The position numbers and the translations under genes were made by a program. DNA of 64,000 nt from Auanema rhodensis (lineage: Eukaryota > Animalia > Nematoda), in NCBI GenBank assembly GCA_964057225.1, contig OZ059900.1:9548001-9612000 (forward strand), read 5' to 3'. Positions 1 through 50,442 of the stretch are shown in pieces. The notes below the pieces were generated by a model, which was given only the letters and a program-made list of their open reading frames with translations, was not told where the DNA came from and did not search any database. Positions within the stretch are counted from its first letter, which is position 1. Each line of letters opens with the position of its first letter.

Positions 1-1
1 T

Positions 2-1975: not shown

Positions 1976-4900
1976 CTAGTAGTACTCAGAAACACATATA
2001 ACACGGCTATCTATGAAATCTGAATGTTGAACAACATTTTTACCAAACCATTCTTTCTTATTGTTTTTCCTATAAAACGAAATGAAATAAAACAATCGTA
2101 TGGTTAATCGACTTTGTAAAAACTTACGATTTCAGGCATTGCAAGTGATAAATTAATTTTAAGCCATTGCTCGAATTATTCGTGGTTGACTTCGTCGAAG
2201 TACTGCTCGAAGAAGTCTCAGTTGACTTTTTCGTTGGCGGAGTTTTCGTTGATGGGGCCTTGGTTGATGGAGCTTTTGTAGACTTCATGGTAGTACTCAT
2301 GTTAGGATCTTTAGTCGACTTCGGCGTTGACGGAGCCTGGGTTGAGGGAGCCTTTGTGGATTTCTTGGTCGTACTCATGTTAGGATCCTTAGTAGACTTC
2401 GGCGTTGACGGAGCCTTGGTTGATGGAGTCTTTGTGGATTTCTTGGTAGTACTCATGTTAGGATCTTTAGTTGACTTCGGCGTTGACGGAGCCTTGGTTG
2501 ATGGAGCCTTTGTGGATTTCTTGGTAGTACTCATGTTAGAATCTTTAGTAGACTTCTTCGTTGGTGAAGTCTTTGTCGATGGAGTCTTTGTGTATTTCTT
2601 GGTCGTACTCATGTTAGGATCTTTAGTAGACTTCTTCGTTGGTGAAGTCTTCGTCGATGGAGTCTTTGTGGATTTCTTGGTCGTACTCATGTTAGAATCT
2701 TTAGTATACTTCTTCGTTGGTGAAGTCTTCGTCGATGGAGTCTTTGTGGATTTCTTGGTCGTACTCATGTTAGCATCTTTAGTAGACTTCTTCGTTGGTG
2801 AAGTCTTCGTCGATGGAGTCTTTGTGGATTTCTTGGTCGTACTCATGTTAGGATCTTTAGTAGACTTCTTCGTTGGTGAAGTCTTCGTCGATGGAGTCTT
2901 TGTGGATTTCTTGGTCGTACTCATGTTAGGATCCTTAGTATACTTCTTCGTTGGTGAAGTCTTCGTCGATAGAGTCTTTGTGGAATTCTTGGTAGTACTC
3001 ATGTTAGGATCCTTAGTAGACTTCGGCGTTGACGGAGCCTTGGTTGATGGAGTCTTTGTGGATTTCTTGGTAGTACTCATGTTAGGATCTTTAGTTGACT
3101 TCGGCGTTGACGGAGCCTTGGTTGATGGAGTCTTTGTGTATTTCTTGGTAGTACTCATGTTAGGATCCTTAGTATACTTCTTCGTTGATGAAGTCTTCGT
3201 CGATGGAGTCTTTGTGGATTTCTTGGTCGTACTCAGGTTAGGATCCTTAGTATACTTCTTCGTTGGTGAAGTCTTCGTCGATGGAGTCTTTGTGGATTTC
3301 TTGGTAGTACTCATGTTAGGATCTTTAGTTGACTTCGGCGTTGACGGAGCCTTGGTTGATGAAGCCTTTGTCGACTTCATGGTCGTACTCATGTTAGGAT
3401 CCTTAGTAGACTTCGGCGTTGACGGAGCCTTGGTTGATGGAGCCTTTGTAGACTTCATGGTAGTACTCATGTTAGGATCTTTAGTTGACTTCGGCGTTGA
3501 CGGAGCCTTGGTTGATGGAGCCTTTGTAGACTTCATGGTAGTACTCATGTTAGGATCTTTAGTTGACTTCGGCGTTGACGGAGCCTTGGTTGATGGAGCC
3601 TTTGTAGACTTCATGGTAGTACTCATGTTAGGATCTTTTGTTGACTTCGGCGTTGACGGAGCCTTGGTTGATGGAGCCTTTGTGGATTTCTTGGTCGTAC
3701 TCATGTTAGGATCCTTAGTATACTTCTTCGTTGGTGAAGTCTTCGTCGATAGAGTCTTTGTGGATTTCTTGGTAGTACTCATGTTAGGATCCTTAGTAGA
3801 CTTCTTCGTTGGTGAAGTCTTCGTCGATGGAGTCTTTGTGTATTTCTTGGTCGTACTCATGTTAGGATCCTTAGTATACTTCTTCGTTGGTGAAGTCTTC
3901 GTCGATAGAGTCTTTGTGGATTTCTTGGTAGTACTCATGTTAGGATCCTTAGTAGACTTCGGCGTTGGTGAAGTCTTCGTCGATGGAGTCTTTGTGGATT
4001 TCTTGGTCGTACTCATGTTAGGATCCTTAGTATACTTCTTCGTTGGTGAAGTCTTCGTCGATAGAGTCTTTGTGGATTTCTTGGTAGTACTCATGTTAGG
4101 ATCCTTAGTAGACTTCTTCGTTGGTGAAGTCTTCGTCGATGGAGTCTTTGTGTATTTCTTGGTAGTACTCATGTTAGGATCCTTAGTATACTTCTTCGTT
4201 GGTGAAGTCTTCGTCGATGGAGTCTTTGTGTATTTCTTGGTAGTACTCATGTTAGGATCCTTAGTATACTTCTTCGTTGGTGAAGTCTTCGTCGATGGAG
4301 TCTTTGTGGATTTCTTGGTAGTACTCATGTTAGGATCCTTAGTAGACTTCTTCGTTGGTGAAGTCTTCGTCGATGGAGTCTTTGTGTATTTCTTGGTCGT
4401 ACTCATGTTAGGATCCTTAGTATACTTCTTCGTTCGTGAAGTCTTCGTCGATGGAGTCTTTGTGTATTTCTTGGTAGTACTCATGTTAGGATCCTTAGTA
4501 TACTTCTTCGTTGGTGAAGTCTTCGTCGATGGAGTCTTTGTGGATTTCTTGGTAGTACTCATGTTAGGATCCTTAGTAGACTTCTTCGTTGGTGAAGTCT
4601 TCGTCGATGGAGTCTTTGTGTATTTCTTGGTCGTACTCATGTTAGGATCCTTAGTATACTTCTTCGTTCGTGAAGTCTTCGTCGATGGAGTCTTTGTGTA
4701 TTTCTTGGTAGTACTCATGTTAGGATCCTTAGTATACTTCTTCGTTGGTGAAGTCTTCGTCGATGCAGCCTTTGTAGACTTCATGGTAGTACTCATGTTA
4801 GGATCTTTAGTTGACTTCGGCGTTGACGGAGCCTTGGTTGATGGAGCCTTTGTCGACTTCATGGTAGTACTCATGTTAGGATCCTTAGTTGACTTCGGCG

Positions 4901-7900
4901 TTGACGGAGCCTTGGTTGATGGAGCCTTTGTCGACTTCATGGTAGTACTCATGTTAGGATCTTTAGTTGACTTCGGCGTTGACGGAGCCTTGGTTGATGG
5001 AGCCTTTGTCGACTTCATGGTAGTACTCATGTTAGGATCTTTAGTTGACTTCGGCGTTGACGGAGCCTTGGTTGATGGAGCCTTTGTCGACTTCATGGTA
5101 GTACTCATGTTAGGATCTTTAGTTGACTTCGGCGTTGACGGAGCCTTGGTTGATGGAGCCTTTGTCGACTTCATGGTAGTACTCATGTTAGGATCTTTAG
5201 TAGACTTCGGCGTTGACGGAGCCTTGGTTGATGCAGCCTTTGTAGACTTCATGGTAGTACTCATGTTAGGATCTTTAGTAGACTTCGGCGTTGACGGAGC
5301 CTTGGTTGATGCAGCCTTCGTAGACTTCATGGTAGTACTCATGTTAGGATCTTTAGTTGACTTCGGCGTTGACGGAGCCTTGGTTGATGAAGCCTTTGTC
5401 GACTTCATGGTAGTACTCATGGTAGGATCTTTAGTTGACTTCGGCGTTGACGGAGCCTTTGTTGATGCAGCCTTTGTAGACTTCATGGTAGTACTCATGG
5501 TAGGATCTTTAGTTGACTTCGGCGTTGACGGAGCCTTTGTTGATGCAGCCTTTGTAGACTTCATGGTAGTACTCATGGTAGGATCTTTAGTTGACTTCGG
5601 CGTTGACGGAGCCTTGGTTGATGGAGCCTTTGTCGACTTCATGGTAGTACTCATGTTAGGATCTTTAGTTGACTTCGGCGTTGACGGAGCCTTGGTTGAT
5701 GCAGCCTTTGTAGACTTCATGGTAGTACTCATGGTAGGATCTTTAGTAGACTTCGGCGTTGACGGAGCCTTGGTTGATGGAGCCTTTGTCGACTTCATGG
5801 TAGTACTCATGTTAGGATCTTTAGTTGACTTCGGCGTTGACGGAGCCTTGGTTGATGCAGCCTTTGTAGACTTCATTGTAGTACTCATGTTAGGATCTTT
5901 AGTTGACTTCGGCGTTGACGGAGCCTTGGTTGATGGAGCCTTTGTCGACTTCATGGTAGTACTCATGTTAGGATCTTTAGTAGACTTCGGCGTTGACGGA
6001 GCCTTGGTTGATGGAGCCTTTGTCGACTTCATGGTAGTACTCATGTTAGGATCTTTAGTAGACTTCGGCGTTGACGGAGCCTTGGTTGATGGAGCCTTTG
6101 TCGACTTCATGGTAGTACTCATGTTAGGATCTTTAGTAGACTTCGGCGTTGACGGAGCCTTGGTTGATGGAGCCTTTGTCGACTTCATGGTAGTACTCAT
6201 GTTAGGATCTTTAGTAGACTTCGGCGTTGACGGAGCCTTGGTTGATGGAGCCTTTGTCGACTTCATGGTAGTACTCATGTTAGGATCTTTAGTAGACTTC
6301 GGCGTTGACGGAGCCTTGGTTGATGGAGCCTTTGTAGACTTCATGGTAGTACTCATGTTAGGATCTTTAGTAGACTTCGGCGTTGACGGAGCCTTGGTTG
6401 ATGCAGCCTTTGTCGACTTCATGGTAGTACTCATGTTAGGATCTTTAGTTGACTTCGGCGTTGACGGAGCCTTGGTTGATGGAGCCTTTGTCGACTTCAT
6501 GGTAGTACTCATGGTAGGATCTTTAGTTGACTTCGGCGTTGACGGAGCCTTGGTTGATGGAGCCTTTGTCGACTTCATGGTAGTACTCATGTTAGGATCT
6601 TTAGTTGACTTCGGCGTTGACGGAGCCTTGGTTGATGGAGCCTTTGTCGACTTCATGGTAGTACTCATGTTAGGATCTTTAGTTGACTTCGGCGTTGACG
6701 GAGCCTTGGTTGATGGAGCCTTTGTCGACTTCATGGTAGTACTCATGTTAGGATCTTTAGTTGACTTCGGCGTTGACGGAGCCTTGGTTGATGGAGCCTT
6801 TGTCGACTTCATGGTAGTACTCATGTTAGGATCTTTAGTTGACTTCGGCGTTGACGGAGCCTTGGTTGATGGAGCCTTTGTCGACTTCATGGTAGTACTC
6901 ATGTTAGGATCTTTAGTAGACTTCGGCGTTGACGGAGCCTTGGTTGATGCAGCCTTTGTAGACTTCATGGTAGTACTCATGTTAGGATCTTTAGTTGACT
7001 TCGGCGTTGACGGAGCCTTGGTTGATGGAGCCTTTGTCGACTTCATGGTAGTACTCATGTTAGGATCTTTAGTTGACTTCGGCGTTGACGGAGCCTTGGT
7101 TGATGGAGCCTTTGTCGACTTCATGGTAGTACTCATGTTAGGATCTTTAGTTGACTTCGGCGTTGACGGAGCCTTGGTTGATGGAGCCTTTGTAGACTTC
7201 ATGGTAGTACTCATGTTAGGATCTTTAGTTGACTTCGGCGTTGACGGAGCCTTGGTTGATGGAGCCTTTGTCGACTTCATGGTAGTACTCATGTTAGGAT
7301 CTTTAGTAGACTTCGGCGTTGACGGAGCCTTGGTTGATGCAGCCTTTGTAGACTTCATGGTAGTACTCATGTTAGGATCTTTAGTTGACTTCGGCGTTGA
7401 CGGAGCCTTGGTTGATGCAGCCTTTGTAGACTTCATGGTAGTACTCATGTTAGGATCTTTAGTTGACTTCGGCGTTGACGGAGCCTTGGTTGATGCAGCC
7501 TTTGTCGACTTCATGGTAGTACTCATGGTAGGATCTTTAGTTGACTTCGGCGTTGACGGAGCCTTGGTTGATGCAGCCTTTGTAGACTTCATGGTAGTAC
7601 TCATGTTCGGATCTTTAGTAGACTTCGGCGTTGACGGAGCCTTGGTTGATGGAGCCTTTGTCGACTTCATGGTAGTACTCATGGTAGGATCTTTAGTTGA
7701 CTTCGGCGTTGACGGAGCCTTGGTTGATGCAGCCTTTGTAGACTTCATGGTAGTACTCATGTTCGGATCTTTAGTAGACTTCGGCGTTGACGGAGCCTTG
7801 GTTGATGAAGCCTTTGTCGACTTCATGGTAGTACTCATGTTCGGATCTTTAGTAGACTTCGGCGTTGACGGAGCCTTGGTTGATGGAGCCTTTGTCGACT

Positions 7901-10900
7901 TCATGGTAGTACTCATGGTAGGATCTTTAGTTGACTTCGGCGTTGACGGAGCCTTGGTTGATGCAGCCTTTGTAGACTTCATGGTAGTACTCATGGTAGG
8001 ATCTTTAGTTGACTTCGGCGTTGACGGAGCCTTGGTTGATGGAGCCTTTGTTGACTTCATGGTAGTACTCATGGTAGGATCTTTAGTTGACTTCGGCGTT
8101 GACGGAGCCTTGGTTGATGGAGCCTTTGTTGACTTCATGGTAGTACTCATGGTAGGATCTTTAGTTGACTTCGGCGTTGACGGAGCCTTGGTTGATGGAG
8201 CCTTTGTCGACTTCATGGTAGTACTCATGTTAGGATCTTTAGTTGACTTCGGCGTTGACGGAGCCTTGGTTGATGGAGCCTTTGTCGACTTCATGGTAGT
8301 ACTCATGGTAGGATCTTTAGTTGACTTCGGCGTTGACGGAGCCTTGGTTGATGGAGCCTTTGTCGACTTCATGGTAGTACTCATGGTAGGATCTTTAGTT
8401 GACTTCGGCGTTGACGGAGCCTTGGTTGATGGAGCCTTTGTCGACTTCATGGTAGTACTCATGTTAGGATCTTTAGTTGACTTCGGCGTTGACGGAGCCT
8501 TGGTTGATGGAGCCTCTGTCGACTTCATGGTAGTACTCATGGTAGGATCTTTAGTTGACTTCGGCGTTGACGGAGCCTTGGTTGATGGAGCCTCTGTCGA
8601 CTTCATGGTAGTACTCATGGTAGGATCTTTAGTTGACTTCGGCGTTGACGGAGCCTTGGTTGATGGAGCCTTTGTCGACTTCATGGTAGTACTCATGTTA
8701 GGATCTTTCGTTGACTTCGGCGTTGACGGAGCCTTGGTTGATGGAGCCTTTGTCGACTTCATGGTAGTACTCATGTTAGGATCTTTAGTAGACTTTGGCG
8801 TTGACGGAGCCTTGGTTGATGCAGCCTTTGTAGACTTCATGGTAGTACTCATGTTCGGATCTTTAGTAGACTTCGGCGTTGACGGAGCCTTGGTTGATGC
8901 AGCCTTTGTAGACTTCATGGTAGTACTCATGTTAGGATCTTTAGTAGACTTTGGCGTTGACGGAGCCTTGGTTGATGGAGCCTTTGTCGACTTCATGGTA
9001 GTACTCATGTTAGGATCTTTAGTTGACTTCGGCGTTGACGGAGCCTTGGTTGATGGAGCCTTTGTAGACTTCTTGGTAGTACTCATGTTAGGATCTTTAG
9101 TAGACTTCGGCGTTGACGGAGCCTTGGTTGATGGAGCCTTTGTCGACTTCATGGTAGTACTCATGGTAGGATCTTTAGTTGACTTCGGCGTTGACGGAGC
9201 CTTGGTTGATGCAGCCTTTGTAGACTTCATTGTAGTACTCATGGTAGGATCTTTAGTTGACTTCGGCGTTGACGGAGCCTTGGTTGATGCAGCCTTTGTA
9301 GACTTCATGGTAGTACTCATGGTAGGATCTTTAGTTGACTTCGGCGTTGACGGAGCCTTGGTTGATGGAGCCTTTGTTGACTTCATGGTAGTACTCATGG
9401 TAGGATCTTTAGTTGACTTCGGCGTTGACGGAGCCTTGGTTGATGGAGCCTTTGTTGACTTCATGGTAGTACTCATGGTAGGATCTTTAGTTGACTTCGG
9501 CGTTGACGGAGCCTTGGTTGATGGAGCCTTTGTCGACTTCATGGTAGTACTCATGTTAGGATCTTTAGTTGACTTCGGCGTTGACGGAGCCTTGGTTGAT
9601 GCAGCCTTTGTAGACTTCATTGTAGTACTCATGTTAGGATCTTTAGTTGACTTCGGCGTTGACGGAGCCTTGGTTGATGGAGCCTTTGTCGACTTCATGG
9701 TAGTACTCATGTTAGGATCTTTAGTAGACTTCGGCGTTGACGGAGCCTTGGTTGATGGAGCCTTTGTCGACTTCATGGTAGTACTCATGTTAGGATCTTT
9801 AGTAGACTTCGGCGTTGACGGAGCCTTGGTTGATGGAGCCTTTGTCGACTTCATGGTAGTACTCATGTTAGGATCTTTAGTAGACTTCGGCGTTGACGGA
9901 GCCTTGGTTGATGGAGCCTTTGTCGACTTCATGGTAGTACTCATGTTAGGATCTTTAGTAGACTTCGGCGTTGACGGAGCCTTGGTTGATGGAGCCTTTG
10001 TCGACTTCATGGTAGTACTCATGTTAGGATCTTTAGTAGACTTCGGCGTTGACGGAGCCTTGGTTGATGGAGCCTTTGTAGACTTCATGGTAGTACTCAT
10101 GTTAGGATCTTTAGTAGACTTCGGCGTTGACGGAGCCTTGGTTGATGCAGCCTTTGTCGACTTCATGGTAGTACTCATGTTAGGATCTTTAGTTGACTTC
10201 GGCGTTGACGGAGCCTTGGTTGATGGAGCCTTTGTCGACTTCATGGTAGTACTCATGGTAGGATCTTTAGTTGACTTCGGCGTTGACGGAGCCTTGGTTG
10301 ATGGAGCCTTTGTCGACTTCATGGTAGTACTCATGTTAGGATCTTTAGTTGACTTCGGCGTTGACGGAGCCTTGGTTGATGGAGCCTTTGTCGACTTCAT
10401 GGTAGTACTCATGTTAGGATCTTTAGTTGACTTCGGCGTTGACGGAGCCTTGGTTGATGGAGCCTTTGTCGACTTCATGGTAGTACTCATGTTAGGATCT
10501 TTAGTTGACTTCGGCGTTGACGGAGCCTTGGTTGATGGAGCCTTTGTCGACTTCATGGTAGTACTCATGTTAGGATCTTTAGTTGACTTCGGCGTTGACG
10601 GAGCCTTGGTTGATGGAGCCTTTGTCGACTTCATGGTAGTACTCATGTTAGGATCTTTAGTAGACTTCGGCGTTGACGGAGCCTTGGTTGATGCAGCCTT
10701 TGTAGACTTCATGGTAGTACTCATGTTAGGATCTTTAGTTGACTTCGGCGTTGACGGAGCCTTGGTTGATGGAGCCTTTGTCGACTTCATGGTAGTACTC
10801 ATGTTAGGATCTTTAGTTGACTTCGGCGTTGACGGAGCCTTGGTTGATGGAGCCTTTGTCGACTTCATGGTAGTACTCATGTTAGGATCTTTAGTTGACT

Positions 10901-13900
10901 TCGGCGTTGACGGAGCCTTGGTTGATGGAGCCTTTGTAGACTTCATGGTAGTACTCATGTTAGGATCTTTAGTTGACTTCGGCGTTGACGGAGCCTTGGT
11001 TGATGGAGCCTTTGTCGACTTCATGGTAGTACTCATGTTAGGATCTTTAGTAGACTTCGGCGTTGACGGAGCCTTGGTTGATGCAGCCTTTGTAGACTTC
11101 ATGGTAGTACTCATGTTAGGATCTTTAGTTGACTTCGGCGTTGACGGAGCCTTGGTTGATGCAGCCTTTGTAGACTTCATGGTAGTACTCATGTTAGGAT
11201 CTTTAGTTGACTTCGGCGTTGACGGAGCCTTGGTTGATGCAGCCTTTGTCGACTTCATGGTAGTACTCATGGTAGGATCTTTAGTTGACTTCGGCGTTGA
11301 CGGAGCCTTGGTTGATGCAGCCTTTGTAGACTTCATGGTAGTACTCATGTTCGGATCTTTAGTAGACTTCGGCGTTGACGGAGCCTTGGTTGATGGAGCC
11401 TTTGTCGACTTCATGGTAGTACTCATGGTAGGATCTTTAGTTGACTTCGGCGTTGACGGAGCCTTGGTTGATGCAGCCTTTGTAGACTTCATGGTAGTAC
11501 TCATGTTAGGATCTTTAGTAGACTTCGGCGTTGACGGAGCCTTGGTTGATGGAGCCTTTGTCGACTTCATGGTAGTACTCATGGTAGGATCTTTAGTTGA
11601 CTTCGGCGTTGACGGAGCCTTGGTTGATGCAGCCTTTGTAGACTTCATGGTAGTACTCATGTTCGGATCTTTAGTAGACTTCGGCGTTGACGGAGCCTTG
11701 GTTGATGCAGCCTTTGTAGACTTCATGGTAGTACTCATGTTAGGATCTTTAGTAGACTTTGGCGTTGACGGAGCCTTGGTTGATGGAGCCTTTGTCGACT
11801 TCATGGTAGTACTCATGGTAGGATCTTTAGTTGACTTCGGCGTTGACGGAGCCTTGGTTGATGGAGCCTTTGTCGACTTCATGGTAGTACTCATGTTAGG
11901 ATCTTTAGTTGACTTCGGCGTTGACGGAGCCTTGGTTGATGCAGCCTTTGTCGACTTCATGGTAGTACTCATGGTAGGATCTTTAGTTGACTTCGGCGTT
12001 GACGGAGCCTTGGTTGATGGAGCCTTTGTCGACTTCATGGTAGTACTCATGTTAGGATCTTTAGTTGACTTCGGCGTTGACGGAGCCTTGGTTGATGCAG
12101 CCTTTGTCGACTTCATGGTAGTACTCATGGTAGGATCTTTAGTTGACTTCGGCGTTGACGGAGCCTTGGTTGATGGAGCCTTTGTCGACTTCATGGTAGT
12201 ACTCATGGTAGGATCTTTAGTTGACTTCGGCGTTGACGGAGCCTTGGTTGATGCAGCCTTTGTAGACTTCATTGTAGTACTCATGTTAGGATCTTTAGTT
12301 GACTTCGGCGTTGACGGAGCCTTGGTTGATGCAGCCTTTGTAGACTTCATGGTAGTACTCATGTTAGGATCTTTAGTTGACTTCGGCGTTGACGGAGCCT
12401 TGGTTGATGGAGCCTTTGTCGACTTCATGGTAGTACTCATGTTAGGATCTTTAGTTGACTTCGGCGTTGACGGAGCCTTGGTTGATGCAGCCTTTGTAGA
12501 CTTCATGGTAGTACTCATGTTAGGATCTTTAGTAGACTTCGGCGTTGACGGAGCCTTGGTTGATGCAGCCTTTGTAGACTTCATTGTAGTACTCATGTTA
12601 GGATCTTTAGTTGACTTCGGCGTTGACGGAGCCTTGGTTGATGCAGCCTTTGTAGACTTCATTGTAGTACTCATGTTAGGATCTTTAGTTGACTTCGGCG
12701 TTGACGGAGCCTTGGTTGATGCAGCCTTTGTCGACTTCATGGTAGTACTCATGGTAGGATCTTTAGTTGACTTCGGCGTTGACGGAGCCTTGGTTGATGG
12801 AGCCTTTGTCGACTTCATGGTAGTACTCATGGTAGGATCTTTAGTTGACTTCGGCGTTGACGGAGCCTTGGTTGATGGAGCCTTTGTCGACTTCATGGTA
12901 GTACTCATGTTAGGATCTTTAGTTGACTTCGGCGTTGACGGAGCCTTGGTTGATGCAGCCTTTGTAGACTTCATTGTAGTACTCATGTTAGGATCTTTAG
13001 TTGACTTCGGCGTTGACGGAGCCTTGGTTGATGCAGCCTTTGTCGACTTCATGGTAGTACTCATGGTAGGATCTTTAGTTGACTTCGGCGTTGACGGAGC
13101 CTTGGTTGATGCAGCCTTTGTAGACTTCATTGTAGTACTCATGTTAGGATCTTTAGTTGACTTCGGCGTTGACGGAGCCTTGGTTGATGCAGCCTTTGTA
13201 GACTTCATGGTAGTACTCATGTTAGGATCTTTAGTAGACTTTGGCGTTGACGGAGCCTTGGTTGATGGAGCCTTTGTCGACTTCATGGTAGTACTCATGG
13301 TAGGATCTTTAGTTGACTTCGGCGTTGACGGAGCCTTGGTTGATGGAGCCTTTGTAGACTTCATGGTAGTACTCATGTTAGGATCTTTAGTTGACTTCGG
13401 CGTTGACGGAGCCTTGGTTGATGGAGCCTTTGTCGACTTCATGGTAGTACTCATGGTAGGATCTTTAGTTGACTTCGGCGTTGACGGAGCCTTGGTTGAT
13501 GGAGCCTTTGTCGACTTCATGGTAGTACTCATGGTAGGATCTTTAGTTGACTTCGGCGTTGACGGAGCCTTGGTTGATGCAGCCTTTGTCGACTTCATGG
13601 TAGTACTCATGGTAGGATCTTTAGTTGACTTCGGCGTTGACGGAGCCTTGGTTGATGGAGCCTTTGTCGACTTCATGGTAGTACTCATGGTAGGATCTTT
13701 AGTTGACTTCGGCGTTGACGGAGCCTTGGTTGATGCAGCCTTTGTCGACTTCATGGTAGTACTCATGGTAGGATCTTTAGTTGACTTCGGCGTTGACGGA
13801 GCCTTGGTTGATGGAGCCTTTGTCGACTTCATGGTAGTACTCATGTTAGGATCTTTAGTAGACTTCGGCGTTGACGGAGCCTTGGTTGATGCAGCCTTTG

Positions 13901-37900: not shown

Positions 37901-37967
37901 AACTTTTCGTGTCGTTAACATGTTCTGTACAGCAAGCAGAGATTAATAGAATTAAAATATATAGCAT
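1976..37967 (-). CDS. Giant secreted Thr/Ser/Lys/Pro-rich mucin-like protein (predicted 11,959 aa) with C-terminal Cys/Trp half-domain
   Basis: Exon 1 37967-37799 (signal peptide MLYILILLISACC); 54-nt intron 37798-37745 (GTCAGT...TTACAG) removes two in-frame stops; exon 2 37744-2128 is open throughout; 58-nt intron 2127-2070 (GTAAGT...TTATAG); exon 3 2069-1976 encodes KNNKKEWFGKNVVQHSDFIDSRVICVSEYY*. Exon total 35,880 nt is divisible by 3. TATATAAAAG at 38022-38013 and AATAAA at 1933-1928 bracket the model. Confidence 0.85.
2220..37540 (-). repeat. Coding tandem array, 78-bp (26-aa) unit, about 450 copies in three sequence blocks
   Basis: Period 78 seen directly (e.g. CGGCGTTGAC at 4818 and 4896). 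N-terminal block ~34540-37540 TKKYTKDHSKSTTEKPTKTPWTKNPP (~38 units); middle block ~4760-34540 TPKSTKDPNMSTTMKSTKAPSTKAPS (~380 units); C-terminal block ~2220-4760 mostly TKKYTKDPNMSTTKKSTKTPSTKTSP (~32 units). Copy numbers are length/78 estimates. Confidence 0.97.
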
Positions 37968-38012
37968 TTCACATTTGCCACTTTCGACATCTTTTTCAAA
38001 ATAGTTGTTTTT

Positions 38013-38453: not shown

Positions 38454-39414
38454 TCAGTTATATTTAACAATGCACTCCATGTGGCTATCAAGAGTGATAT
38501 ATCTGCCACGATGATTTCTTCCTTGCCAATCTTTTTCAGGGAAAGTGCTATAAAATATAATTGTTGATATGAATATTGTGATTTGTGGGACTACCTGTGA
38601 TAATCACAACGAGCTCTATAGGTTAATTCTAAGTCTGAAGTATATCTTTCAGTAGTTGTCGTTATATCGATAGCTTGAATCATTTGAAGGTTATCGATTG
38701 CTACTTCTGGTTGGACAGTAGTTGTATCGGACTCTGCTGCACTGGCTGCTTGAATAGTGTCAGGGAACGTTACCTTGCCAGCAGCAACACTAGCCGTTTG
38801 CATTTGCCCAGTTTGCTTGAATGTTTCGGATACCTCAGCTCCGCTTCCTTCTTCCAAATCATCAGCTACTTCTGTTGGCACTTCAGTTGATGTGGTAGTT
38901 TCAACAAATTCTTCTACAGCCAACATATTTTGTGTTTCCTCATTTTCTGCAGCTTGACGACGATGTCTTGAGTGACTGTGTCTATTGACAATTTTCAAGA
39001 CGTTGCCATTGGAGTCAACCAATTTCAGAGATTCACAGTTGTGGCCGCATGAACATTTAATTGTCATTAAATCTCTTGAGCTTCTGCTTCTGTGAATGAA
39101 AACGTTTTATGCAGTTAATACTATGAGCTGATACCGGTAGTTAGAAAATTGCACACAGTTCTTCTCGTGTTCAGAATCAGGACATGTATCTACAAGCTTT
39201 GGACACTTCTCATCTGAAAGTAACAAAACTCAAATTTTCAATAACGTTAAAGCATCATACTTCTATAGTCGGAATAGTAATGGTAGGGGTACGAATGTGG
39301 GACATAGGAAGGAGAAATATGATTCAAAGAGTATGATGTTGGGGAATTGGATGGTGCATAACCATAGCCGCTAACAATTGTTGCTACAGCAAGAAAATTG
39401 ACAATTTTCAGCAT
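38454..39414 (-). CDS. Secreted 8-Cys-domain protein with an acidic Thr/Glu-rich insertion (candidate chondroitin proteoglycan)
   Basis: Exons 39414-39261, 39213-39135, 39089-38595, 38547-38454 with 45-47 nt GT-AG introns give one open frame: MLKIVNFLAVATIVSG-YGY...KCPKLVDTCPDSEHEKNC...IKCSCGHNCESLKLVDSNGNVL...RHRR...DDLEEGSGAE...LELTYRARCDYHSTFPEKDWQGRNHRGRYITLDSHMECIVKYN*. TATATAA-like box about 40 nt upstream. Confidence 0.85.
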
Positions 39415-39992: not shown

Positions 39993-40652
39993 ATGTTCAA
40001 GGTTCTCATTCTTGGTGCCATCACTGGCCTCGCTATCGCCGGATACGGAGTTCCAGCCGCTGACACCGCTTCTGCTCCAGGATACGGAGTTGCTGCAAAT
40101 CCACCAGCAACCGGATATGTTCCAGCTAACCCAGTTCCAGTTTACTACCAACCACAAATTCTTCCAGTTCTTCCAGCTCGCCACGATCTTGTAATAATAT
40201 TTTTAAGTAGTATCATGTTTACGTATCATTTCCAGCTCTTCCCACGTCGCCACCATCACCATCACTCTAGCTCTAGCTCTGAAGAACACAGACATAGATC
40301 TTGCCGCAAACCAACCATCACTTGCAAAAATAGTAATTGCAAAAATTTGGAAGCCAACCGGTACAATGTTTCTTCAAATCAGCAACACAATTTTGAAAAT
40401 TTTACAGCAACGGAAATGATGAAGTTACCTTCAAATGCGAATGCCAATATTCAAGCTGTAATGGACTAATTCTTGTTAGTGGAGACAACCAATACCTCGG
40501 TTCCACCACTTATAATTCTATCACCTACACAGCTACCTGTGGAAGACACGGGTAATCATAATCATTCCAAGTTTCATAAAATAAATTGAAATTTCAGAAA
40601 ATGGCGCAAGGACGGAAAATCTTTCAAGAATGTCCAGTGCATCGTTTTGTAA
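39993..40652 (+). CDS. Small secreted Pro/Ala/Tyr-rich, His-tract, 8-Cys-domain protein (paralog A)
   Basis: Exons 39993-40190, 40236-40360, 40408-40551, 40598-40652. Signal peptide MFKVLILGAITGLAIA; GYGVPAA-type repeats; RRHHHHHSSSSSEE; domain CRKPTITCKNSNC...FKCECQYSSCNGLILV...ITYTATCGRHGKWRKDGKSFKNVQCIVL*. TATATAAA at 39948-39955; AATAAA about 40 nt after stop. Confidence 0.88.
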
Positions 40653-40896: not shown

Positions 40897-41051
40897 TTAT
40901 AAAGATTGATCGTTTCGATAGACATACCGCGGTTTTAGTATATCATCAGAACAACAACAAAAAACAAGGTTTTGAATTCAAAACTATATTTATTAATGAG
41001 TTATTTTAGATTTATCATTACAAAAAGCATTAATAATGTTCAAAATATTTT

Positions 41052-41689: not shown

Positions 41690-42449
41690 CTAGAATGATT
41701 CATAAGAATATGGTATAATGAGAAATGTGAAAAAAATAGTTCAATACAAAAAAAAAACAAAAAAAAAACATTTATCTTACTTTTTCTATAAATACAGCCG
41801 GTTACTTGCGTTGAAAGTAAAAAAATGATTTTAATGCACCAACGTGAACTTTTCACGTAAAACGCGCAAACACCAGTCAGACCCATTTTGTTAACTTACA
41901 TACAACTAATTAATTAGCTGCCATAGAAAATAAATAAAATATAATTTTCTCAATAGATTTTTCCGCTTTTTTTAATTTTAACAATTTTAGACAACTTCCT
42001 CATTTTTTAATGTTATCATAATTTAGTATAAAGCGCTCAATCCCAGATCGGTGTAGAGTATCAGGCAATCCCAATTCCGTGTAGATCATCAGGATACTAC
42101 TCTCGGCATATAAGATACCTTTTCTTTCACTAAGAACCAATAAAACAAACAAAATAAAGTATATAAAATTTATTTACAAACATTTTACAAATACATAAAT
42201 TTACCAAAACTATATATTATCATAGTTCAGAGAAATCTTTGAATCGATTCCCTGAATGGCTTTGCGAATAGCCGTGACATTATTTTTCTTCTTTTCGGCT
42301 GCTTTCTTCTTTTTCTGGCGGTTGAGTTGGCACTCTTTATAAATAAAAAAAAATATATATATAAGAGTCACTCTTTATAAATATAAACTTTTAACTTACA
42401 TACCACATTTCTATTATTTTTTTCAGATATGCGTAACGATTAGCAAACC

Positions 42450-42575
42450 AAAGTAGATTCTTTTGAACATAGTTCTGAACTGTATGAATATCAATTTGCT
42501 TATAACTAGTGGCCAATAGTTGTAAGCAAATTAATATACATACAGTACAGAACTATGTTCACCAGAATCTACTTT
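42450..42575. repeat. 126-bp loopless imperfect palindrome
   Basis: Left arm AAAGTAGATTCTTTTGAACATAGTTCTGAACTGTATG... pairs with right arm ...CATACAGTACAGAACTATGTTCACCAGAATCTACTTT around the centre TGG|CCA (42512/42513); 7 mismatches in 63 pairs by manual count. Confidence 0.9.
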
Positions 42576-42579
42576 TCAG

Positions 42580-44351: not shown

Positions 44352-46731
44352 TCGATGAGTATCAAAATATGAAATAGATTTGAATCGTTCAATGATCCCC
44401 ATGAGTAAGTTGTGACGCAATTTTATTAAATTATTCACTGAAATCATTTGTATAAAAGCCGCACGTCTCGAGGAAGGAATCACATCGCCCTCAACAATGT
44501 TCAAAGTTCTCATTCTTGGTGCCATCGCTGGCCTCGCTATTGCTGAATATGGAGTTCCAGCTGCTGATCCAGCTCCAGCTTATGAACCAGCTGCTGATAC
44601 CGTTTCTGCTCCCGCATATGGAGTTGCTTCTGATCCAGTACCAACCTCCGGATATGCTGCAGTTCAACCAGCCACAGTTTACTACCAACCACAAATTCTT
44701 CCAGTTCTGCCAGCTCGCCACGATCTTGTAATAATATTTTTAAGTAGTATCATGTTTACGTATCATTTCCAGCTCTTCCCACGTCGCCACCATCACCATC
44801 ACTCTAGCTCTAGCTCTGAAGAGCACAGACATAGATCTTGCCGCAAACCAACCATCACTTGCAAAAATAGTAATTGCAAAAATTTGGAAGCCAACCGGTA
44901 CAATGTTTCTTCAAATCAGCAACACAATTTTGAAAATTTTACAGCAACGGAAATGATGAAGTTACCTTCAAATGCGAATGCCAATATTCAAGCTGTAATG
45001 GACTAATTCTTGTTAGTGGAGACAACCAATACCTCGGTTCCACCACTTATAATTCTATCACCTACACAGCTACCTGTGGAAGACACGGGTAATCATCATC
45101 ATTCCAAGTTTCATAAAATAAATTGAAATTTCAGAAAATGGCGCAAGGACGGAAAATCTTTCAAGAATGTCCAGTGCATCGTTTTGTAAGAAACTAGCAT
45201 TTTTTTTTGTATTTTCTGAGCATAATAAGAATAAACATTTTTATAGTATTCAAGTATTTTAATGAGTGAAAAGTTGTTACAAATTAAACAAAATATGAGA
45301 ATAGGAAATGAAATTTCTAAATAACTATATGAATTACCGATATATGGAAACTTACTTCAACTTTAACTGGAAACAAAACATATAGGAATGTTCTATGAGT
45401 ATAAACCAACAACTAACATATATTTCAAGAAAAAGATATAAAGAGAAATATAGTTTTCACATGATATTTAGAGAATATTTGTCTTTTTCTTTCAATTTTT
45501 TATCTTTTTATAACTATAATTATTTTTTATTTTTAAATACAAAGTATGAATATTTTTATGAAATTTGAAAAAAAAAGTTTGTTTGCAATGAGAAAGGAAT
45601 AATTCAAATGAAAATTTACAAATAAAGTTGTTTATTGATTGAAGAACAAAGTGTGATCATACTATATTCATTGGAAAAATACAAAATTATTTCGAACAAA
45701 TCTCAGATATATAATAGAATTGGGTTTATTGTCTGTTTTTTATTTATACTTTGATCACTGTTTTTCGATTCTTCGATTAAAATATCGAATACATTATTTT
45801 CATTTTCAAAAGGCGATATAGTATTTATACTAAGTTTAATATAAGTTCTACCTGCTTAACTCAATTTACTATAAGGTATTAAAAATTAATTTTGGAAGAA
45901 AATAGAGAATATAGTGAAAAGTCAAAATCAAAAGATTATCGAAAGATACATAAAAAGTTATATGAAGCGCTAAATTCGAATATTATCTTTGCTGGAAACA
46001 TTAGTTTACTATTTTTTATCTGATCAGGCTAATCAGTTAATTATAAACACATTTTTGTGTTTTTCCAACATGAAATGCAACTCTCACAAAAAATAATACT
46101 ACTGTAATACTAGAGTAGAGCATTTAATAACTTAATTTGATACATATTAGTATTTTTGTTTTGCCTGGTGGTACACATTTGAAAACTACTTTTCAGGTTT
46201 GCCTATTTCATTTCTTTTTAGTACAGCTCAATGATATACATCTGTACATACTTAGTTCAAGGGGAGCAAGTTGCTACCAATCCTAGTAATCATGATCCGG
46301 CCCTGAACTGAAAGTTAAGTTTAGCTCGCAGGGCACGGATACAAGATACGGATGTTATCTAATCAATAGATAATAATATAAATATTTATAAAAGTAAAAA
46401 TCACAAATCAAACATTTATATTGCAAAATTGAAACAACAGAATAGCGTAGATCAATTATCTTATCCTGATATATACGACTTTGTTTATACTAGGAGAACT
46501 GTTAAAAAATTTGGTTTCTTGCTTTATTGGTAGAATAAATAAACTTTATTTGAATTCAAAATTACTTCTATTTTTTTCGACTGTATCATTGTTCTCGAAT
46601 ATATTTGATAAAAAATCAACACATTTACGATAACATGTTACAGAAGAGATTTGTTCTAGAATAAGTTGAAGTTGGAAATTGAAAATCAATAATCAATAGC
46701 GTTAAATAGTTTATTTCAGATTAAATTTTTA
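44352..46731 (+). repeat. Left arm of 6.1-kb inverted duplication
   Basis: Reverse complement of 48052-50442; 44352 pairs with 50442 and ATG 44497 with ATG 50297 (same coordinate sum 94794); inner ends TTAAATTTTTA / TAAAAATTTAA. Confidence 0.93.
44497..45189 (+). CDS. Small secreted His-tract 8-Cys-domain protein (paralog B)
   Basis: Same 4-exon structure as paralog A; N-terminus MFKVLILGAIAGLAIAEYGVPAADPAPAYEPAAD...; same C-terminal domain; TATAAAA at ~44451. Confidence 0.88.
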
Positions 46732-46772
46732 TTGGGTTTATTGTCTGTTTTTCATTTATACTTTGATGCTTC

Positions 46773-46870
46773 GAATACAATAATCAGAAAACTCTCACCT
46801 ACACCGCTACCTGCGGAAGACATGGCTAATCATCATCATTCCAATTTTCACAAAAATTAATTGAAATTTC
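46773..46870 (+). pseudogene. Fragment of a further paralog (end of exon 3 plus intron 3)
   Basis: Encodes EYNNQKTLTYTATCGRHG followed by CTAATCATCATCATTCCAA..., the intron-3 sequence of paralog B with donor GT changed to CT and the acceptor truncated. Confidence 0.75.
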
Positions 46871-47260: not shown

Positions 47261-47955
47261 ATGTTCAAGGTTCTCCTTCTTGGTGCCATCACTGGCCTCG
47301 CTGTCGCCGGATACGTAGCTCCAGCTGCTGATCCAACTCCAGCTTATCAACCAGCTGCTGATACCGCTACTGCACCAGCGTACGGAGTTGCAGCCAATCC
47401 ACCTACAACAGGATATGTTCCAGCTAACCCAGTTCCAGTTTACTATCAACCACAAGTTTTCCCTGTACTTTTCTTGAGCCATACAATCATTCATATTTAT
47501 AACCCAGTAAACAAGAAAAAAGATTTCAGGTTTTCCCCCGTCGTCATCACCATCATCATTCCAGCTCTAACTCTCACGAAACACACGTAAAGTGGTGCCG
47601 TGCTCCTAAGCAATTGTGCAAAAATGATTCGAACTGTGAAAAATTTGACTTGAACAAGTAAGTAAAATATTAGTTTAGCTCGGTCAAATTATAAATTTTA
47701 GTTACAACTGGGGAGATGACGATATCGAAATTTCGTGCACATGTTCCAATTGCGCTCAACTACTTCTTCTCAACGAAAACGACGTAATTCTTAGCAGTAG
47801 CTCTAAAAACATCACCTACACTGCCACTTGCGGAAAACACAGGTATGTTAGCAAAACAGATATACCTGTAATGTCAAATTTGTAGTAAATGGCGCAAGAA
47901 TGGAAATTCTTTCATTGGAGCCAAATGCTTGAAATTCAGAAATATTCCAGTATAG
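47261..47955 (+). CDS. Small secreted His-tract 8-Cys-domain protein (divergent paralog C)
   Basis: Exons 47261-47464, 47530-47657, 47702-47842, 47886-47955: MFKVLLLGAITGLAVA...VFPRRHHHHHSSSNSHETHVKWCRAPKQLCKNDSNC...ISCTCSNCAQLLLL...ITYTATCGKHSKWRKNGNSFIGAKCLKFRNIPV*. TATATAAA at 47213-47220; AATAAA right after the stop. Confidence 0.87.
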
Positions 47956-48051
47956 AAATAAATATATTTTTTACACATTTAGCCGTTTATTCAAACATTT
48001 TAAACAAAAACGCATAATTTACAGAGTAATTCAGTTATGACATTTTACAAG

Positions 48052-50442
48052 TAAAAATTTAATCTGAAATAAACTATTTAACGCTATTGATTATTGATTT
48101 TCAATTTCCAACTTCAACTTATTCTAGAACAAATCTCTTCTGTAACATGTTATCGTAAATGTGTTGATTTTTATCAAATATATTCGAGAACAATGATACA
48201 GTCGAAAAAAATAGAAGTAATTTTGAATTCAAATAAAGTTTATTTATTCTACCAATAAAGCAAGAAACCAAATTTTTTAACAGTTCTCCTAGTATAAACA
48301 AAGTCGTATATATCAGGATAAGATAATTGATCTACGCTATTCTGTTGTTTCAATTTTGCAATATAAATGTTTGATTTGTGATTTTTACTTTTATAAATAT
48401 TTATATTATTATCTATTGATTAGATAACATCCGTATCTTGTATCCGTGCCCTGCGAGCTAAACTTAACTTTCAGTTCAGGGCCGGATCATGATTACTAGG
48501 ATTGGTAGCAACTTGCTCCCCTTGCACTAAGTATGTACAGATGTATGTGATTATATCATTGAGCATGCTGTACTAAAAAGAAATGAAATAGGCAAACCTG
48601 AAAAGTAGTTTTCAAATGTGTACCACCAGGCAAAACAAAAATACTAATATGTATCAAATTAAGTTATTAAATGCTCTACTCTAGTATTACAGTAGTATTA
48701 TTTTTTGTGAGAGTTGCATTTCATGTTGGAAAAACACAAAAATGTGTTTATAATTAACTGATTAGCCTGATCAGATAAAAAATAGTAAACTAATGTTTCC
48801 AGCAAAGATAATATTCGAATTTAGCGCTTCATATAACTTTTTATGTATCTTTCGATAATCTTTTGATTTTGACTTTTCACTATATTCTCTATTTTCTTCC
48901 AAAATTAATTTTTAATACCTTATAGTAAATTGAGTTAAGCAGGTACAACTTATATTAAACTTAGTATAAGTACTATATCGCCTTTTGAAAATGAAAATAA
49001 TGTAATCGATATTTTAATCAAAGAATCGAAAAAAAGTGGTCAAAGTATAAATGAAAAACAGGCAATAAACCTAATTCTATTATATATCTGAGATTTGTTC
49101 GAAATAATTTTGTATTTTTCCAATGAAGATAGTATGATCACACTTTGTTCTTCAATCAATAAACAACTTTATTTGTAAATTTTCATTTGAATTATTCCTT
49201 TCTCATTGCAAACAAACTTTTTTTTTCAAATTTCATAAAAATATTCATACTTTGTATTTAAAAATAAAAAATAATTATAGTTATAAAAAGATAAAAAATT
49301 GAAAGAAAAAGACAAATATTCTCTAAATATCATGTGAAAACTATATTTCTCTTTATATCTTTTTCTTGAAATATATGTTAGTTGTTGGTTTATACTCATA
49401 GAACATTCCTATATGTTTTGTTTCCAGTTAAAGTTGAAGTAAGTTTCCATATATCGGTATTTCATATAGTTATTTAGAAATTTCATTTCCTATTCTCATA
49501 TTTTGTTTAATTTGTAACAACTTTTCACTCATTAAAATACTTGAATACTATAAAAATGTTTATTCTTATTATGCTCAGAAAATACAAAAAAAAATGCTAG
49601 TTTCTTACAAAACGATGCACTGGACATTCTTGAAAGATTTTCCGTCCTTGCGCCATTTTCTGAAATTTCAATTTATTTTATGAAACTTGGAATGATGATG
49701 ATTACCCGTGTCTTCCACAGGTAGCTGTGTAGGTGATAGAATTATAAGTGGTGGAACCGAGGTATTGGTTGTCTCCACTAACAAGAATTAGTCCATTACA
49801 GCTTGAATATTGGCATTCGCATTTGAAGGTAACTTCATCATTTCCGTTGCTGTAAAATTTTCAAAATTGTGTTGCTGATTTGAAGAAACATTGTACCGGT
49901 TGGCTTCCAAATTTTTGCAATTACTATTTTTGCAAGTGATGGTTGGTTTGCGGCAAGATCTATGTCTGTGCTCTTCGGAGCTAGAGCTAGAGTGATGGTG
50001 ATGGTGGCGACGTGGGAAGAGCTGGAAATGATACGTAAACATGATACTACTTAAAAATATTATTACAAGATCGTGGCGAGCTGGAAGAACTGGAAGAATT
50101 TGTGGTTGGTAGTAAACTGTGGCTGGTTGAACTGCAGCATATCCGGAGGTTGGTACTGGATCAGAAGCAACTCCATATGCGGGAGCAGAAACGGTATCAG
50201 CAGCTGGTTCATAAGCTGGAGCTGGATCAGCAGCTGGAACTCCATATTCAGCAATAGCGAGGCCAGCGATGGCACCAAGAATGAGAACTTTGAACATTGT
50301 TGAGGGCGATGTGATTCCTTCCTCGAGACGTGCGGCTTTTATACAAATGATTTCAGTGAATAATTTAATAAAATTGCGTCACAACTTACTCATGGGGATC
50401 ATTGAACGATTCAAATCTATTTCATATTTTGATACTCATCGA
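48052..50442 (-). repeat. Right arm of 6.1-kb inverted duplication
   Basis: Reverse complement of 44352-46731 with few substitutions and small indels (e.g. near 48545-48570). Confidence 0.93.
49605..50297 (-). CDS. Small secreted His-tract 8-Cys-domain protein (paralog D, inverted copy of B)
   Basis: 693-bp span equal to paralog B; ORF-track translation 49788..50297 is identical to 44497..45006; same splice sites. Confidence 0.88.

What the first reader, a model, noticed from the sequence alone, without database searches (positions are those of the whole stretch)
1976..50297. The 12,000-aa mucin appears to be an exploded member of the neighbouring small 8-Cys-domain family: one loop at about 5, 120 and 11,800 residues
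Seen: after splicing, the three gene types end alike. Giant: LKLIYHLQCLKS^KNNKKEWFGKNVVQHSDFIDSRVICVSEYY. 38.5-kb gene: LELTYRARCDYHS^TFPEKDWQGRNHRGRYITLDSHMECIVKYN. Paralogs A-D: SITYTATCGRHG^KWRKDGKSFKNVQCIVL. All have Y-x3-C, a phase-2 intron 3-4 codons after that Cys, a Trp and a final Cys. In A-D the preceding strand (LILVSGDNQYL) is only about 5 aa before this module. In the 38.5-kb gene the equivalent strand (LKLVDSNGNVL) is separated from it by a basic site and ~120 Thr/Glu-rich residues. In the giant a weak remnant (LLFANKNLLDI...SSKHTKR) precedes the whole repeat array and the six N-terminal Cys are gone. Inference: mucin birth by expansion of one loop inside a folded domain, with all stages preserved side by side. 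The ORF track hides this because the giant ORF stops at a splice donor.
Basis: partly seen in the sequence, partly recalled or inferred. Interest (0 to 1): 0.88.

Follow-up and report, generated by a model that had tools for sequence, protein, structure and literature searches.

The report
Giant worm mucin sharing neighbour's tail
A nematode gene for a roughly 12,000-residue lysine-rich mucin ends in a 42-residue two-cysteine module that matches the end of the small secreted-protein gene next door, so the mucin probably grew out of a copy of that neighbour; only this tail link can be shown, not the proposed 'exploded loop'.

Summary
Transcript contigs confirm every intron of gene E (the '38.5-kb gene') and of paralog A, plus the giant's first intron. 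E is a true member of the A-D 8-Cys family (z 7-9.5). It carries a 121-residue insert that MAFFT and a fragment AlphaFold model place in a beta-hairpin turn.

The giant is 11,959 aa: 38 + 414 copies of a 26-aa unit, T+S 42%, K 20%. Its last 42 aa match E's tail (z 8, 0 of 20,000 shuffles). Both halves around a same-phase intron are separately significant, and both final exons are 30 codons long.

Three limits:
- The signal is to E only. A profile of A-D-type tails gives p 0.31, the whole-family profile 0.19.
- The giant's 'N-terminal remnant' is no better than chance (p 0.11-0.9), and E's acidic, non-repetitive insert is not a small version of the basic array.
- The giant's last intron has no RNA support. 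It rests on a consensus donor over the ORF's stop and on the homology itself.

So shared descent of the tail is well supported. In-loop explosion is plausible but cannot be told from 3'-end fusion. The family has no Pfam or database relatives beyond one related-species contig. The scan holds an unchecked note of a similar split domain elsewhere in this genome.

The parts
37799..37967 (-). Giant mucin exon 1: ATG at 37967, hydrophobic N-terminus MLYILILLISACC, 56 codons plus 1 nt
   Evidence: Reading of the sequence. An X12 transcript contig covers 37799-37978 and is joined to exon 2.
37745..37798 (-). Giant intron 1, 54 nt, phase 1, GT..AG on the minus strand
   Evidence: RNA joint 37744->37799 in run X12.
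2128..37744 (-). Giant exon 2, 35,617 nt, uninterrupted frame. About 68 unique residues, then arrays U1 and U2, then a Ser/Thr-rich unique linker and LKLIYHLQCLK(S)
   Evidence: ORF list, translation. Composition: T 24, K 20, S 18, P 14, A 8, M 7 %.
34554..37540 (-). Array U1: 38 copies of a 78-bp (26-aa) unit, KKYTKDHSKSTTEKPTKTPWTKNPPT
   Evidence: TRF: 95% matches. Units listed. 15 of 26 residues identical to the U2 consensus (my count from those consensus units).
2247..34536 (-). Array U2: 414 copies of a 78-bp unit, TTMKSTKAPSTKAPSTPKSTKDPNMS. The last ~30 units are older K/Y/T variants intermediate to U1
   Evidence: TRF: 97% matches, 0% indels. Unit census. Variants are enriched at third positions and synonymous sites of the minus-strand frame.
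2070..2127 (-). Predicted giant intron 2, 58 nt, phase 2. Donor AAATC|GTAAGTTTTT overlaps the ORF's TAA stop; acceptor TTTTATAG|G
   Evidence: Strongest donor of the 11 introns tabulated. It uses the first downstream AG and the same TTTTATAG acceptor as E's RNA-verified intron 3. It is the only acceptor that gives a long open frame. No RNA evidence.
1976..2069 (-). Predicted giant exon 3: 30 codons, KNNKKEW...RVICVSEYY, plus TAG stop. AATAAA lies at 1928-1933
   Evidence: Reciprocal best hit with E's last exon. 0 of 20,000 shuffles reach its score.
38454..39414 (-). Gene E (the '38.5-kb gene'), 273 aa, 8 Cys. Exons 39414-39261, 39213-39135, 39089-38595, 38547-38454; intron phases 1, 2, 2
   Evidence: Model. 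All three introns confirmed by X12 RNA joints.
38637..38999 (-). E's insert (coordinates approximate): KIVNRHSHSRHRR (an R-H-R-R site) followed by 108 acidic, Thr/Glu/Ala-rich residues, lying between the strand LKLVDSNGNVL and LELTYRARC
   Evidence: MAFFT places it as a single gap in A, C and L001. Net charge -19, no internal repeat. AlphaFold: residues 64-150 have pLDDT below 50, flanks 72-89.
39993..40652 (+). Paralog A, 173 aa, 8 Cys, 4 exons, intron phases 0, 2, 2
   Evidence: All three introns confirmed by RNA joints.
44497..45189 (+). Paralog B, 184 aa. Its domain is identical to A's
47261..47955 (+). Paralog C, 180 aa, the diverged member. Exon 1 ends at 47464
   Evidence: An X12 loose end shows the exon 1-2 junction.
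49605..50297 (-). Paralog D, 184 aa, an inverted copy of B
   Evidence: Lies in a 2.4-kb inverted duplication at 98.8% identity.

Best explanation
The locus holds a lineage-restricted family of small, highly expressed secreted proteins of an Auanema-type nematode. Each has a signal peptide, a Pro/Ala/Tyr-rich and His-rich stretch, and an all-beta 8-Cys domain.

Gene E is a member whose domain is split by a 121-residue insert. The insert begins with a furin-type R-H-R-R site, is acidic and Thr-rich, is predicted to be disordered, and sits at a beta-hairpin turn.

The giant gene lies directly downstream of E on the same strand. It encodes a secreted, extremely basic PTS-type mucin: 452 copies of a 26-aa unit. 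Its last 42 residues are a strand, a loop containing a Trp, and a second strand, with two Cys. These residues are homologous to E's tail, including the phase-2 intron and the 30-codon last exon.

Most likely (inferred) a tandem duplicate of an E-like gene kept only its first exon layout and its tail. Everything between was lost or overwritten, and one 26-aa unit amplified. The array has old variants at its edges and a young, 97%-identical core.

The retained two-Cys tail probably forms a disulfide-closed hairpin cap, or alternatively an intermolecular cross-link. This is inference and was not tested.
For: - Gene models and RNA joints.
- E against A: z 6.95 with the insert removed, z 9.55 full length. 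The insert aligns as one gap.
- AlphaFold of A's exon 3: pLDDT 85.7, four strands, with the insert point in the 3-residue turn between strands 3 and 4.
- AlphaFold of E's exon 3: ordered flanks around a disordered stretch, residues 64-150.
- Giant tail against E tail: z 8.0, 0 of 20,000 shuffles, and both halves separately significant. E-only HMM: 10.9 bits, 0 of 20,000. Reciprocal best hits within the window.
- Same intron phase, both last exons 30 codons, same Trp-to-Cys spacing.
- Consensus donor lying over the ORF's stop.
- The array behaves as coding sequence: no indels in 32 kb; distinct synonymous variants 19 of 56 possible against nonsynonymous 25 of 178; the 5' end is spliced in RNA.
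- The two genes are adjacent and share orientation.
Against: - No RNA evidence for the last intron. The RNA-like run that holds the giant's 5' end holds none of the sampled words of its 3' end.
- Window-wide E-values for the last exon alone are only 0.2-0.4.
- The giant's tail is not significantly like the A-D tails or the whole-family profile.
- No N-terminal homology, no relic Cys exons near the giant's 5' end, and no DNA similarity of the flanks.
- No orthologues in any database searched, so neither the order of events nor conservation of exon 3 can be checked.
- The array's length rests on a single assembly.
Confidence: 0.6

Rival explanations
1. 3'-end capture or gene fusion. A mucin gene of independent origin (or a de novo repeat ORF with its own signal-peptide exon) acquired the end of exon 3 and the last exon of a neighbouring E-like paralog by deletion or unequal exchange. 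On this reading the array was never inside the domain's loop.
For: Only the tail is homologous. The giant's N-terminus, pre-repeat region and repeats show nothing in common with E or A-D. The chemistry of the array is opposite to that of E's insert. The cluster is structurally dynamic, with direct and inverted duplications and a relic exon.
Against: Both genes have a signal-peptide first exon of similar size (56 and 51 codons) that ends in a phase-1 intron; that is a 1-in-3 coincidence. They are tandem, head to tail, about 490 bp apart. No second, tail-less mucin or donor pseudogene is visible in the window.
Confidence: 0.27
2. Chance resemblance. The giant protein ends at TAA 2124-2126, and the downstream 30-codon frame is not coding.
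For: No RNA across the junction. E-values of 0.2-0.4 in the six-frame window search. A 31-codon open frame has about a 13% chance in this AT-rich DNA.
Against: Pairwise z 8 with 0 of 20,000 shuffles, plus an independent pre-intron match at p 0.0045. Same phase, same exon length, and a consensus GTAAGTTT donor exactly over the stop. My rough product of the window-wide E-value, the upstream motif and the phase match is about 5e-4.
Confidence: 0.07
3. The 35-kb array is a non-coding satellite or an assembly artefact that merely stays open in several frames. Both strands carry giant ORFs.
For: The plus strand also has ORFs of 10,800 and 996 aa. The array is 97% homogeneous. Short-read contigs cannot span it.
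Against: The unit is 78 bp, which is 26 codons. There are no indels in 414 copies. Variation is concentrated at third positions and synonymous sites of the minus-strand frame only. The 5' end is transcribed and spliced in the minus sense, behind a signal peptide. The composition is typical of a PTS domain.
Confidence: 0.06

Closest known systems
De novo 'mucinization' of secreted non-mucin genes by gain of exonic PTS repeats (Pajic et al. 2022, PMC9417175)
   Same: A lineage-specific mucin sits beside non-mucin relatives in a tandem cluster. A densely Ser/Thr/Pro repeat array is amplified within one exon, and the repeats turn over rapidly.
   Different: That work concerns mammals (the SCPP locus and others) and proline-rich, largely unstructured precursors. 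Here the host is a nematode. The relative is a disulfide-rich beta domain, the shared part is only a 42-aa tail, the array is about 11,750 residues long, and it is unusually lysine-rich (20%).
Toxocara canis TES-120 surface-coat mucins (MUC-1 to MUC-5), which have C-terminal six-Cys SXC/ShK domains (from my own knowledge, not checked here)
   Same: Secreted nematode mucins made of a Ser/Thr-rich tract capped by a small Cys-rich module at the C-terminus.
   Different: Their caps are complete SXC/ShK domains and the mucin tracts are short (tens to about 100 aa). Here the cap is a two-Cys fragment of an unrelated 8-Cys domain. Pfam found no SXC or C6 match in the exon pieces tested.
C. elegans PLG-1 copulatory-plug mucin (from my own knowledge, not checked here)
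   Same: A large, lineage-variable nematode mucin encoded mostly by one repeat-filled exon. Expression is probably condition-specific: here E, A and the giant appear in only one of three runs that may be RNA.
   Different: No sequence relationship was found. The function of the giant here is unknown, and no sex or tissue information could be read from the coded runs.
Same-genome note s1-384155: 'three-finger-like domain split by a ~190-aa acidic, furin-site and mucin loop' (an unchecked first-reader note)
   Same: By its title it has the same architecture as gene E: a small Cys domain split by an acidic loop that starts at a furin-type site.
   Different: It lies on another piece of the genome. 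I could not see its sequence, and the sequence look-up returned nothing, so kinship with E is untested.

Membership tests
Local 8-Cys secreted family (paralogs A-D and the L001 homologue): membership of gene E | Eight Cys in the order C-x6-C-x4..7-C ... C-x-C-x2..4-C ... TY-x-A-x-C ... W ... C | tested here: met
   All 8 Cys align. z 6.95-9.55 against shuffles.
Local 8-Cys secreted family: membership of gene E | Two phase-2 introns at equivalent positions, one before the C4 strand and one 4 codons after C7 | tested here: met
   Phases 0,2,2 in A-D and 1,2,2 in E. All are RNA-confirmed in A and E.
Local 8-Cys secreted family: membership of the giant | Complete 8-Cys domain | tested here: not met
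   There are only 4 Cys in 11,959 aa: two in the signal peptide, plus C7 and C8. No relic Cys exons. N-terminus against the family profile: p 0.12-0.25.
Local 8-Cys secreted family: membership of the giant | C-terminal module (L-x-L-x-Y-x3-C, phase-2 intron, W, final C) significantly similar to a member | tested here: met
   Against E: z 8.0, 0 of 20,000 shuffles. Against A-D alone it is not significant.
Local 8-Cys secreted family: membership of the giant | The tail exon is actually spliced on | not testable with these tools
The index shows no RNA holder of 1940-2330. Only the sequence signals support it.
Mucin (functional class: secreted protein with a dense O-glycosylated PTS tandem-repeat domain) | Tandem repeats rich in Pro, Thr and Ser | tested here: met
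   452 units of 26 aa, T+S 42%, P 14%.
Mucin (functional class) | Secretory signal peptide | tested here: inconclusive
   A hydrophobic N-terminus, MLYILILLISACC, was read by eye. No signal-peptide predictor was available.
Mucin (functional class) | Dense O-glycosylation | not testable with these tools
   Needs biochemistry.
Nematode C6 (PF01681) or SXC/ShK six-Cys domains | Match to the Pfam profile | tested here: not met
   No such hit even at E up to 10 for A exon 3, C exon 3, E exon 3 or the giant's tail. Caveat: only single-exon pieces could be submitted.
Gel-forming mucins (VWD-C8-TIL, CTCK) | VWD or cystine-knot terminal domains | tested here: not met
   No Pfam hit in the giant's exon 1, its first 200 aa of exon 2, or its tail.
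Ig-like beta-sandwich | Fold-level match of the domain | tested here: inconclusive
   The 47-aa exon-3 model (pLDDT 85.7) has as best shape matches an I-set Ig cluster (TM 0.67 by query) and MAG Ig domains (Foldseek E 2.2). The only hits of the exhaustive profile search were Ig-repeat and bacterial repeat proteins, through summed weak stretches. The fragment is too short for a verdict.

The most novel reading that the evidence does not exclude
A folded beta-sandwich-like 8-Cys domain was split at one hairpin turn. The split holds first a ~120-aa disordered, furin-primed insert (gene E) and, in a sister duplicate, a runaway 26-aa repeat that grew to about 11,750 residues while the N-terminal half-domain decayed. 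What remains is a disulfide hairpin as the mucin's C-terminal cap. That would be a nematode case of mucin birth from inside a structured domain, with the relatives still adjacent and co-expressed.
Probability: 0.4. Interest if true: 0.7.

Novelty: new variant of a known kind. Interest (0 to 1): 0.55.

Why it matters
Mucins are defined by function, not ancestry, and how new ones arise is known mainly from mammalian cases of repeat gain in unstructured proline-rich proteins (PMC9417175).

This locus would add an invertebrate example in which the non-mucin relatives, an intermediate-looking split-domain gene and a 12,000-residue mucin lie within 50 kb. That makes the origin testable by synteny across Auanema species.

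It also documents three further things. First, an orphan, highly expressed 8-Cys secreted family with no Pfam or database relatives. Second, a rare, extremely basic mucin (20% Lys). Third, a practical annotation point: the giant ORF's stop is a splice donor, so ORF-based calls miss the Cys-bearing tail.

Tried and rejected
- Database kin. ORF B gave only P0001/L001 from one related-species run. E exon 3 gave nothing. The giant's last 200 aa gave nothing among 8,000 candidates.
- The exhaustive profile search with the exon-3 alignment returned only Ig-repeat and bacterial repeat proteins, scored through summed weak stretches. I rejected these as homologues and kept them only as a fold lead.
- Pfam, the ESM-Atlas feature search and Rfam gave nothing.
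- RNA for the giant's 3' end: two run searches listed no RNA holder. That validated E, A and the giant's 5' end but left the key intron untested.
- Similarity between E's insert and the giant's unique regions or repeat units: none. Internal repeats in E's insert: none.
- DNA similarity of the promoters, UTRs or introns of E and the giant: none.
- The full spliced domain could not be folded or scanned. The tools take only contiguous window translations and I avoided typing long sequences, so only exon-3 fragments were modelled.
- Findings look-ups by sequence and by relatives were blank.
Full report
**Setting**

The window is AT-rich eukaryotic DNA with 43-65-nt GT..AG introns. Earlier notes of this scan call the genome an Auanema-type nematode; I did not test that independently.

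A single minus-strand ORF of 11,832 codons runs from 37622 to 2124. The plus strand is also open there. GC content and strand skew are shifted across 2-38 kb.

**Gene models and RNA**

I rebuilt all the models from the sequence.

- Paralogs A (39993-40652, +), B (44497-45189, +), C (47261-47955, +) and D (50297-49605, -) each have four exons with intron phases 0, 2, 2. They encode 173-184 aa with 8 Cys.
- Gene E (39414-38454, -) has four exons with phases 1, 2, 2, and encodes 273 aa with 8 Cys.
- The giant has exon 1 at 37967-37799, exon 2 at 37744-2128 and a predicted exon 3 at 2069-1976, giving 11,959 aa.

The only read-laying run was laid on 37650-43600. Run X12 is labelled 'RNA?' and behaves as RNA: its contigs carry GT..AG or CT..AC joints at exactly my boundaries. 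These cover all three introns of E, all three of A, and the giant's intron 1 at 37745-37798. A loose end also corrected C's exon 1 donor to 47464. Of the three runs from that study, only X12 holds these transcripts; X11 holds traces and X13 none.

The giant's last intron (2127-2070) was not covered, and the run index lists no RNA holder of 1500-2300 or 1940-2330. That is a real gap, and weakly negative, because X12 does hold the giant's 5' end.

**The giant as a coding mucin**

TRF finds two arrays with the same 78-bp period. There are 38 copies at 37540-34554 and 414 copies at 34536-2247, with 95-97% matches and no indels.

The two 26-aa consensus units share 15 of 26 residues (my count). The last ~30 units of the big array are K/Y/T variants intermediate between the two types, so the edges are old and the core is young.

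Differences from the consensus cluster at third codon positions of the minus-strand frame (482 against 208 and 152). Distinct synonymous variants are 19 of 56 possible, against 25 of 178 nonsynonymous.

Together with the spliced 5' end behind a hydrophobic N-terminus, this argues for a translated PTS domain and against a satellite. Composition is T 24, K 20, S 18, P 14, A 8, M 7 %, with a net charge of about +1900. That is a very basic mucin.

**Is E a family member with an insert?**

Yes.

- E against A scores z 9.55 full length and z 6.95 with the insert removed.
- MAFFT places E's extra residues as one block between ...NGNVL and LELTYRARC. In A, C and the related-species homologue L001 the equivalent link is a 6-7-residue Ser/Thr-rich stretch.
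- The insert consists of KIVNRHSHSRHRR, which contains a furin-type R-x-R-R site, followed by 108 residues. These are acidic (net -19), 18% Thr, proline-poor and not internally repeated.
- AlphaFold of A's exon 3 (47 aa, 4-row alignment) gives pLDDT 85.7 and four strands. The insert point falls in the three-residue turn between strands 3 and 4.
- The E exon-3 model has ordered flanks (pLDDT 72-89) around residues 64-150, which are below 50.

These are fragment models that lack exons 2 and 4. They support a hairpin-loop location but do not prove it.

**Is the giant's tail homologous?**

To E, yes.

- Smith-Waterman of the giant's last 42 aa against E's last 43 gives 52 (z 8.0) with one 1-aa gap. 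None of 20,000 shuffles reaches it.
- The 30-codon last exons alone also give 0 of 20,000. The pre-intron nonamers, LKLIYHLQC and LELTYRARC, give p 0.0045.
- An HMM built from E alone gives 10.9 bits, 0 of 20,000.
- In an unbiased six-frame database of the whole window the two last exons are reciprocal best non-self hits, but only at E 0.36 and 0.22.
- Both introns are phase 2. Both final exons are exactly 30 codons. The Trp-to-Cys spacing and the five residues after the last Cys agree.

My rough product of the window-wide E-value, the independent upstream motif and the phase match is about 5e-4.

The giant's tail is not significantly like the A-D tails. Pairwise p is 0.42 and the A-type profile gives p 0.31. 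A tail-only family profile that includes E gives p 0.02. A whole-protein family profile gives p 0.19.

**Is exon 3 real?**

The sequence signals are good.

- The ORF's TAA lies inside AAATC|GTAAGTTTTT, the best donor of the 11 introns I tabulated.
- The first downstream AG sits in TTTTATAG, identical to E's RNA-verified last acceptor.
- That acceptor is the only one that opens a long frame.
- An AATAAA follows the TAG stop by about 45 nt.

A 31-codon open frame alone has about a 13% chance in this DNA. I rate use of exon 3 as likely, at about 0.85, mostly because of the homology itself.

**What is not supported**

- The giant's first 124 residues show no similarity to E or A-D (p 0.59-0.93).
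- No relic Cys-rich exon lies around the giant's 5' end, and no flank or UTR DNA similarity exists.
- E's insert and the giant's units or unique linkers are unrelated and chemically opposite.

Hence the series '5, 120, 11,800 residues in one loop' is a positional analogy for the giant, not a demonstrated homology. E is a cousin, not an intermediate stage. The only extra hint for whole-gene descent is that E and the giant both have a first exon of about 51-56 codons closed by a phase-1 intron, together with their tandem arrangement about 490 bp apart.

**Relatives and known families**

The family is an orphan in every resource I could reach.

- One related-species contig, L001, carries a complete A-type gene.
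- There are no Pfam hits, including none for C6, SXC or VWD-type domains, on the exon pieces.
- The ESM Atlas feature search gave nothing.
- The exhaustive profile search found only repeat proteins.
- Shape searches of the 47-aa model point weakly to Ig-like sandwiches: TM 0.67 by query in the Atlas and Foldseek E 2.2 in the PDB. This is a lead only.

Conceptually the closest precedent is mucin birth by exonic repeat gain in mammals (PMC9417175). Nematode mucins with Cys-rich caps (Toxocara TES-120) and the C. elegans plug mucin PLG-1 are analogies from my own knowledge.

**Mechanism, with status**

- Shown: secreted-type gene structures, expression of A, C, E and the giant's 5' end, E's split domain, tail similarity, and an array under coding constraint.
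- Inferred: the giant derives from a tandem E-like duplicate; the tail forms a disulfide-closed hairpin (C7-C8) or serves in cross-linking; E is cleaved at R-H-R-R; the array is O-glycosylated.

Probabilities: the tail is homologous, about 0.9. Whole-gene descent with in-place expansion, about 0.4-0.6. Fusion or capture, about 0.27. Chance, about 0.07. Non-coding array, about 0.06.

**Verdict**

This is a real and fairly interesting locus. It is a new variant of a known kind of event. The decisive data are junction reads and synteny in sister species, both of which exist in principle but were out of reach here.

Noticed in passing
window 46790-46830 (+): A relic family exon encoding ...KTLTYTATCGRHG, with its donor mutated (GGCTAATC in place of GGGTAATC). 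It lies between paralogs B and C and is the remnant of a further paralog.
   Followed up: partly
window 44352-46734 and 48048-50442; also 40053-40905 against 44587-45444: A 2.4-kb inverted duplication at 98.8% identity carries paralogs B and D and flanks C. A and B share an 858-bp direct duplication at 96%. The cluster is recently rearranged.
   Followed up: partly
window 37650-40833 (runs X11, X12, X13): Of three equal-sized runs from one study, only X12 holds contigs of E, A/C and the giant's 5' end. X11 has traces and X13 none. This suggests sex-, stage- or tissue-specific co-expression. The run identities are coded.
   Followed up: no
window 37792: A DNA contig of run X9 (organism C) leaves the window sequence at 37792, inside the giant's intron 1, while another X9 contig runs straight through. 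This may be a structural variant or a repeat copy.
   Followed up: no
window 2167-34569 and 34566-37556 (+): The strand opposite the mucin also has ORFs of 10,800 and 996 aa. The codon-position pattern of variants fits the minus-strand frame, so these look like by-products of a stop-free repeat unit.
   Followed up: partly
window 53041-55089 (+): Exons of an ammonium transporter gene (Pfam Ammonium_transp, E 1.6e-06 and 3.9e-04).
   Followed up: partly
window 41052-41504 (-): A 150-aa ORF with an HELIH motif and a weak Peptidase_M76 match (E 0.028, below the cut-off). Its identity is unclear.
   Followed up: no
window 1-1509: An earlier scan note places the end of an envelope-bearing BEL/Pao-type retroelement here, about 470 bp downstream of the giant's stop codon. 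I did not examine it.
   Followed up: no
L001 519-917: The database protein P0001 was called with an in-frame TGA read as Trp and with intron read-through. It is a prokaryote-style call on a nematode contig, and the real gene starts at L001 648.
   Followed up: yes
window 37928-37967 (giant residues 1-13): The signal peptide ends in Ala-Cys-Cys. Depending on the cleavage site, the mature mucin could begin with two Cys, which together with the two tail Cys could allow end-to-end disulfide linking. This is speculation.
   Followed up: no
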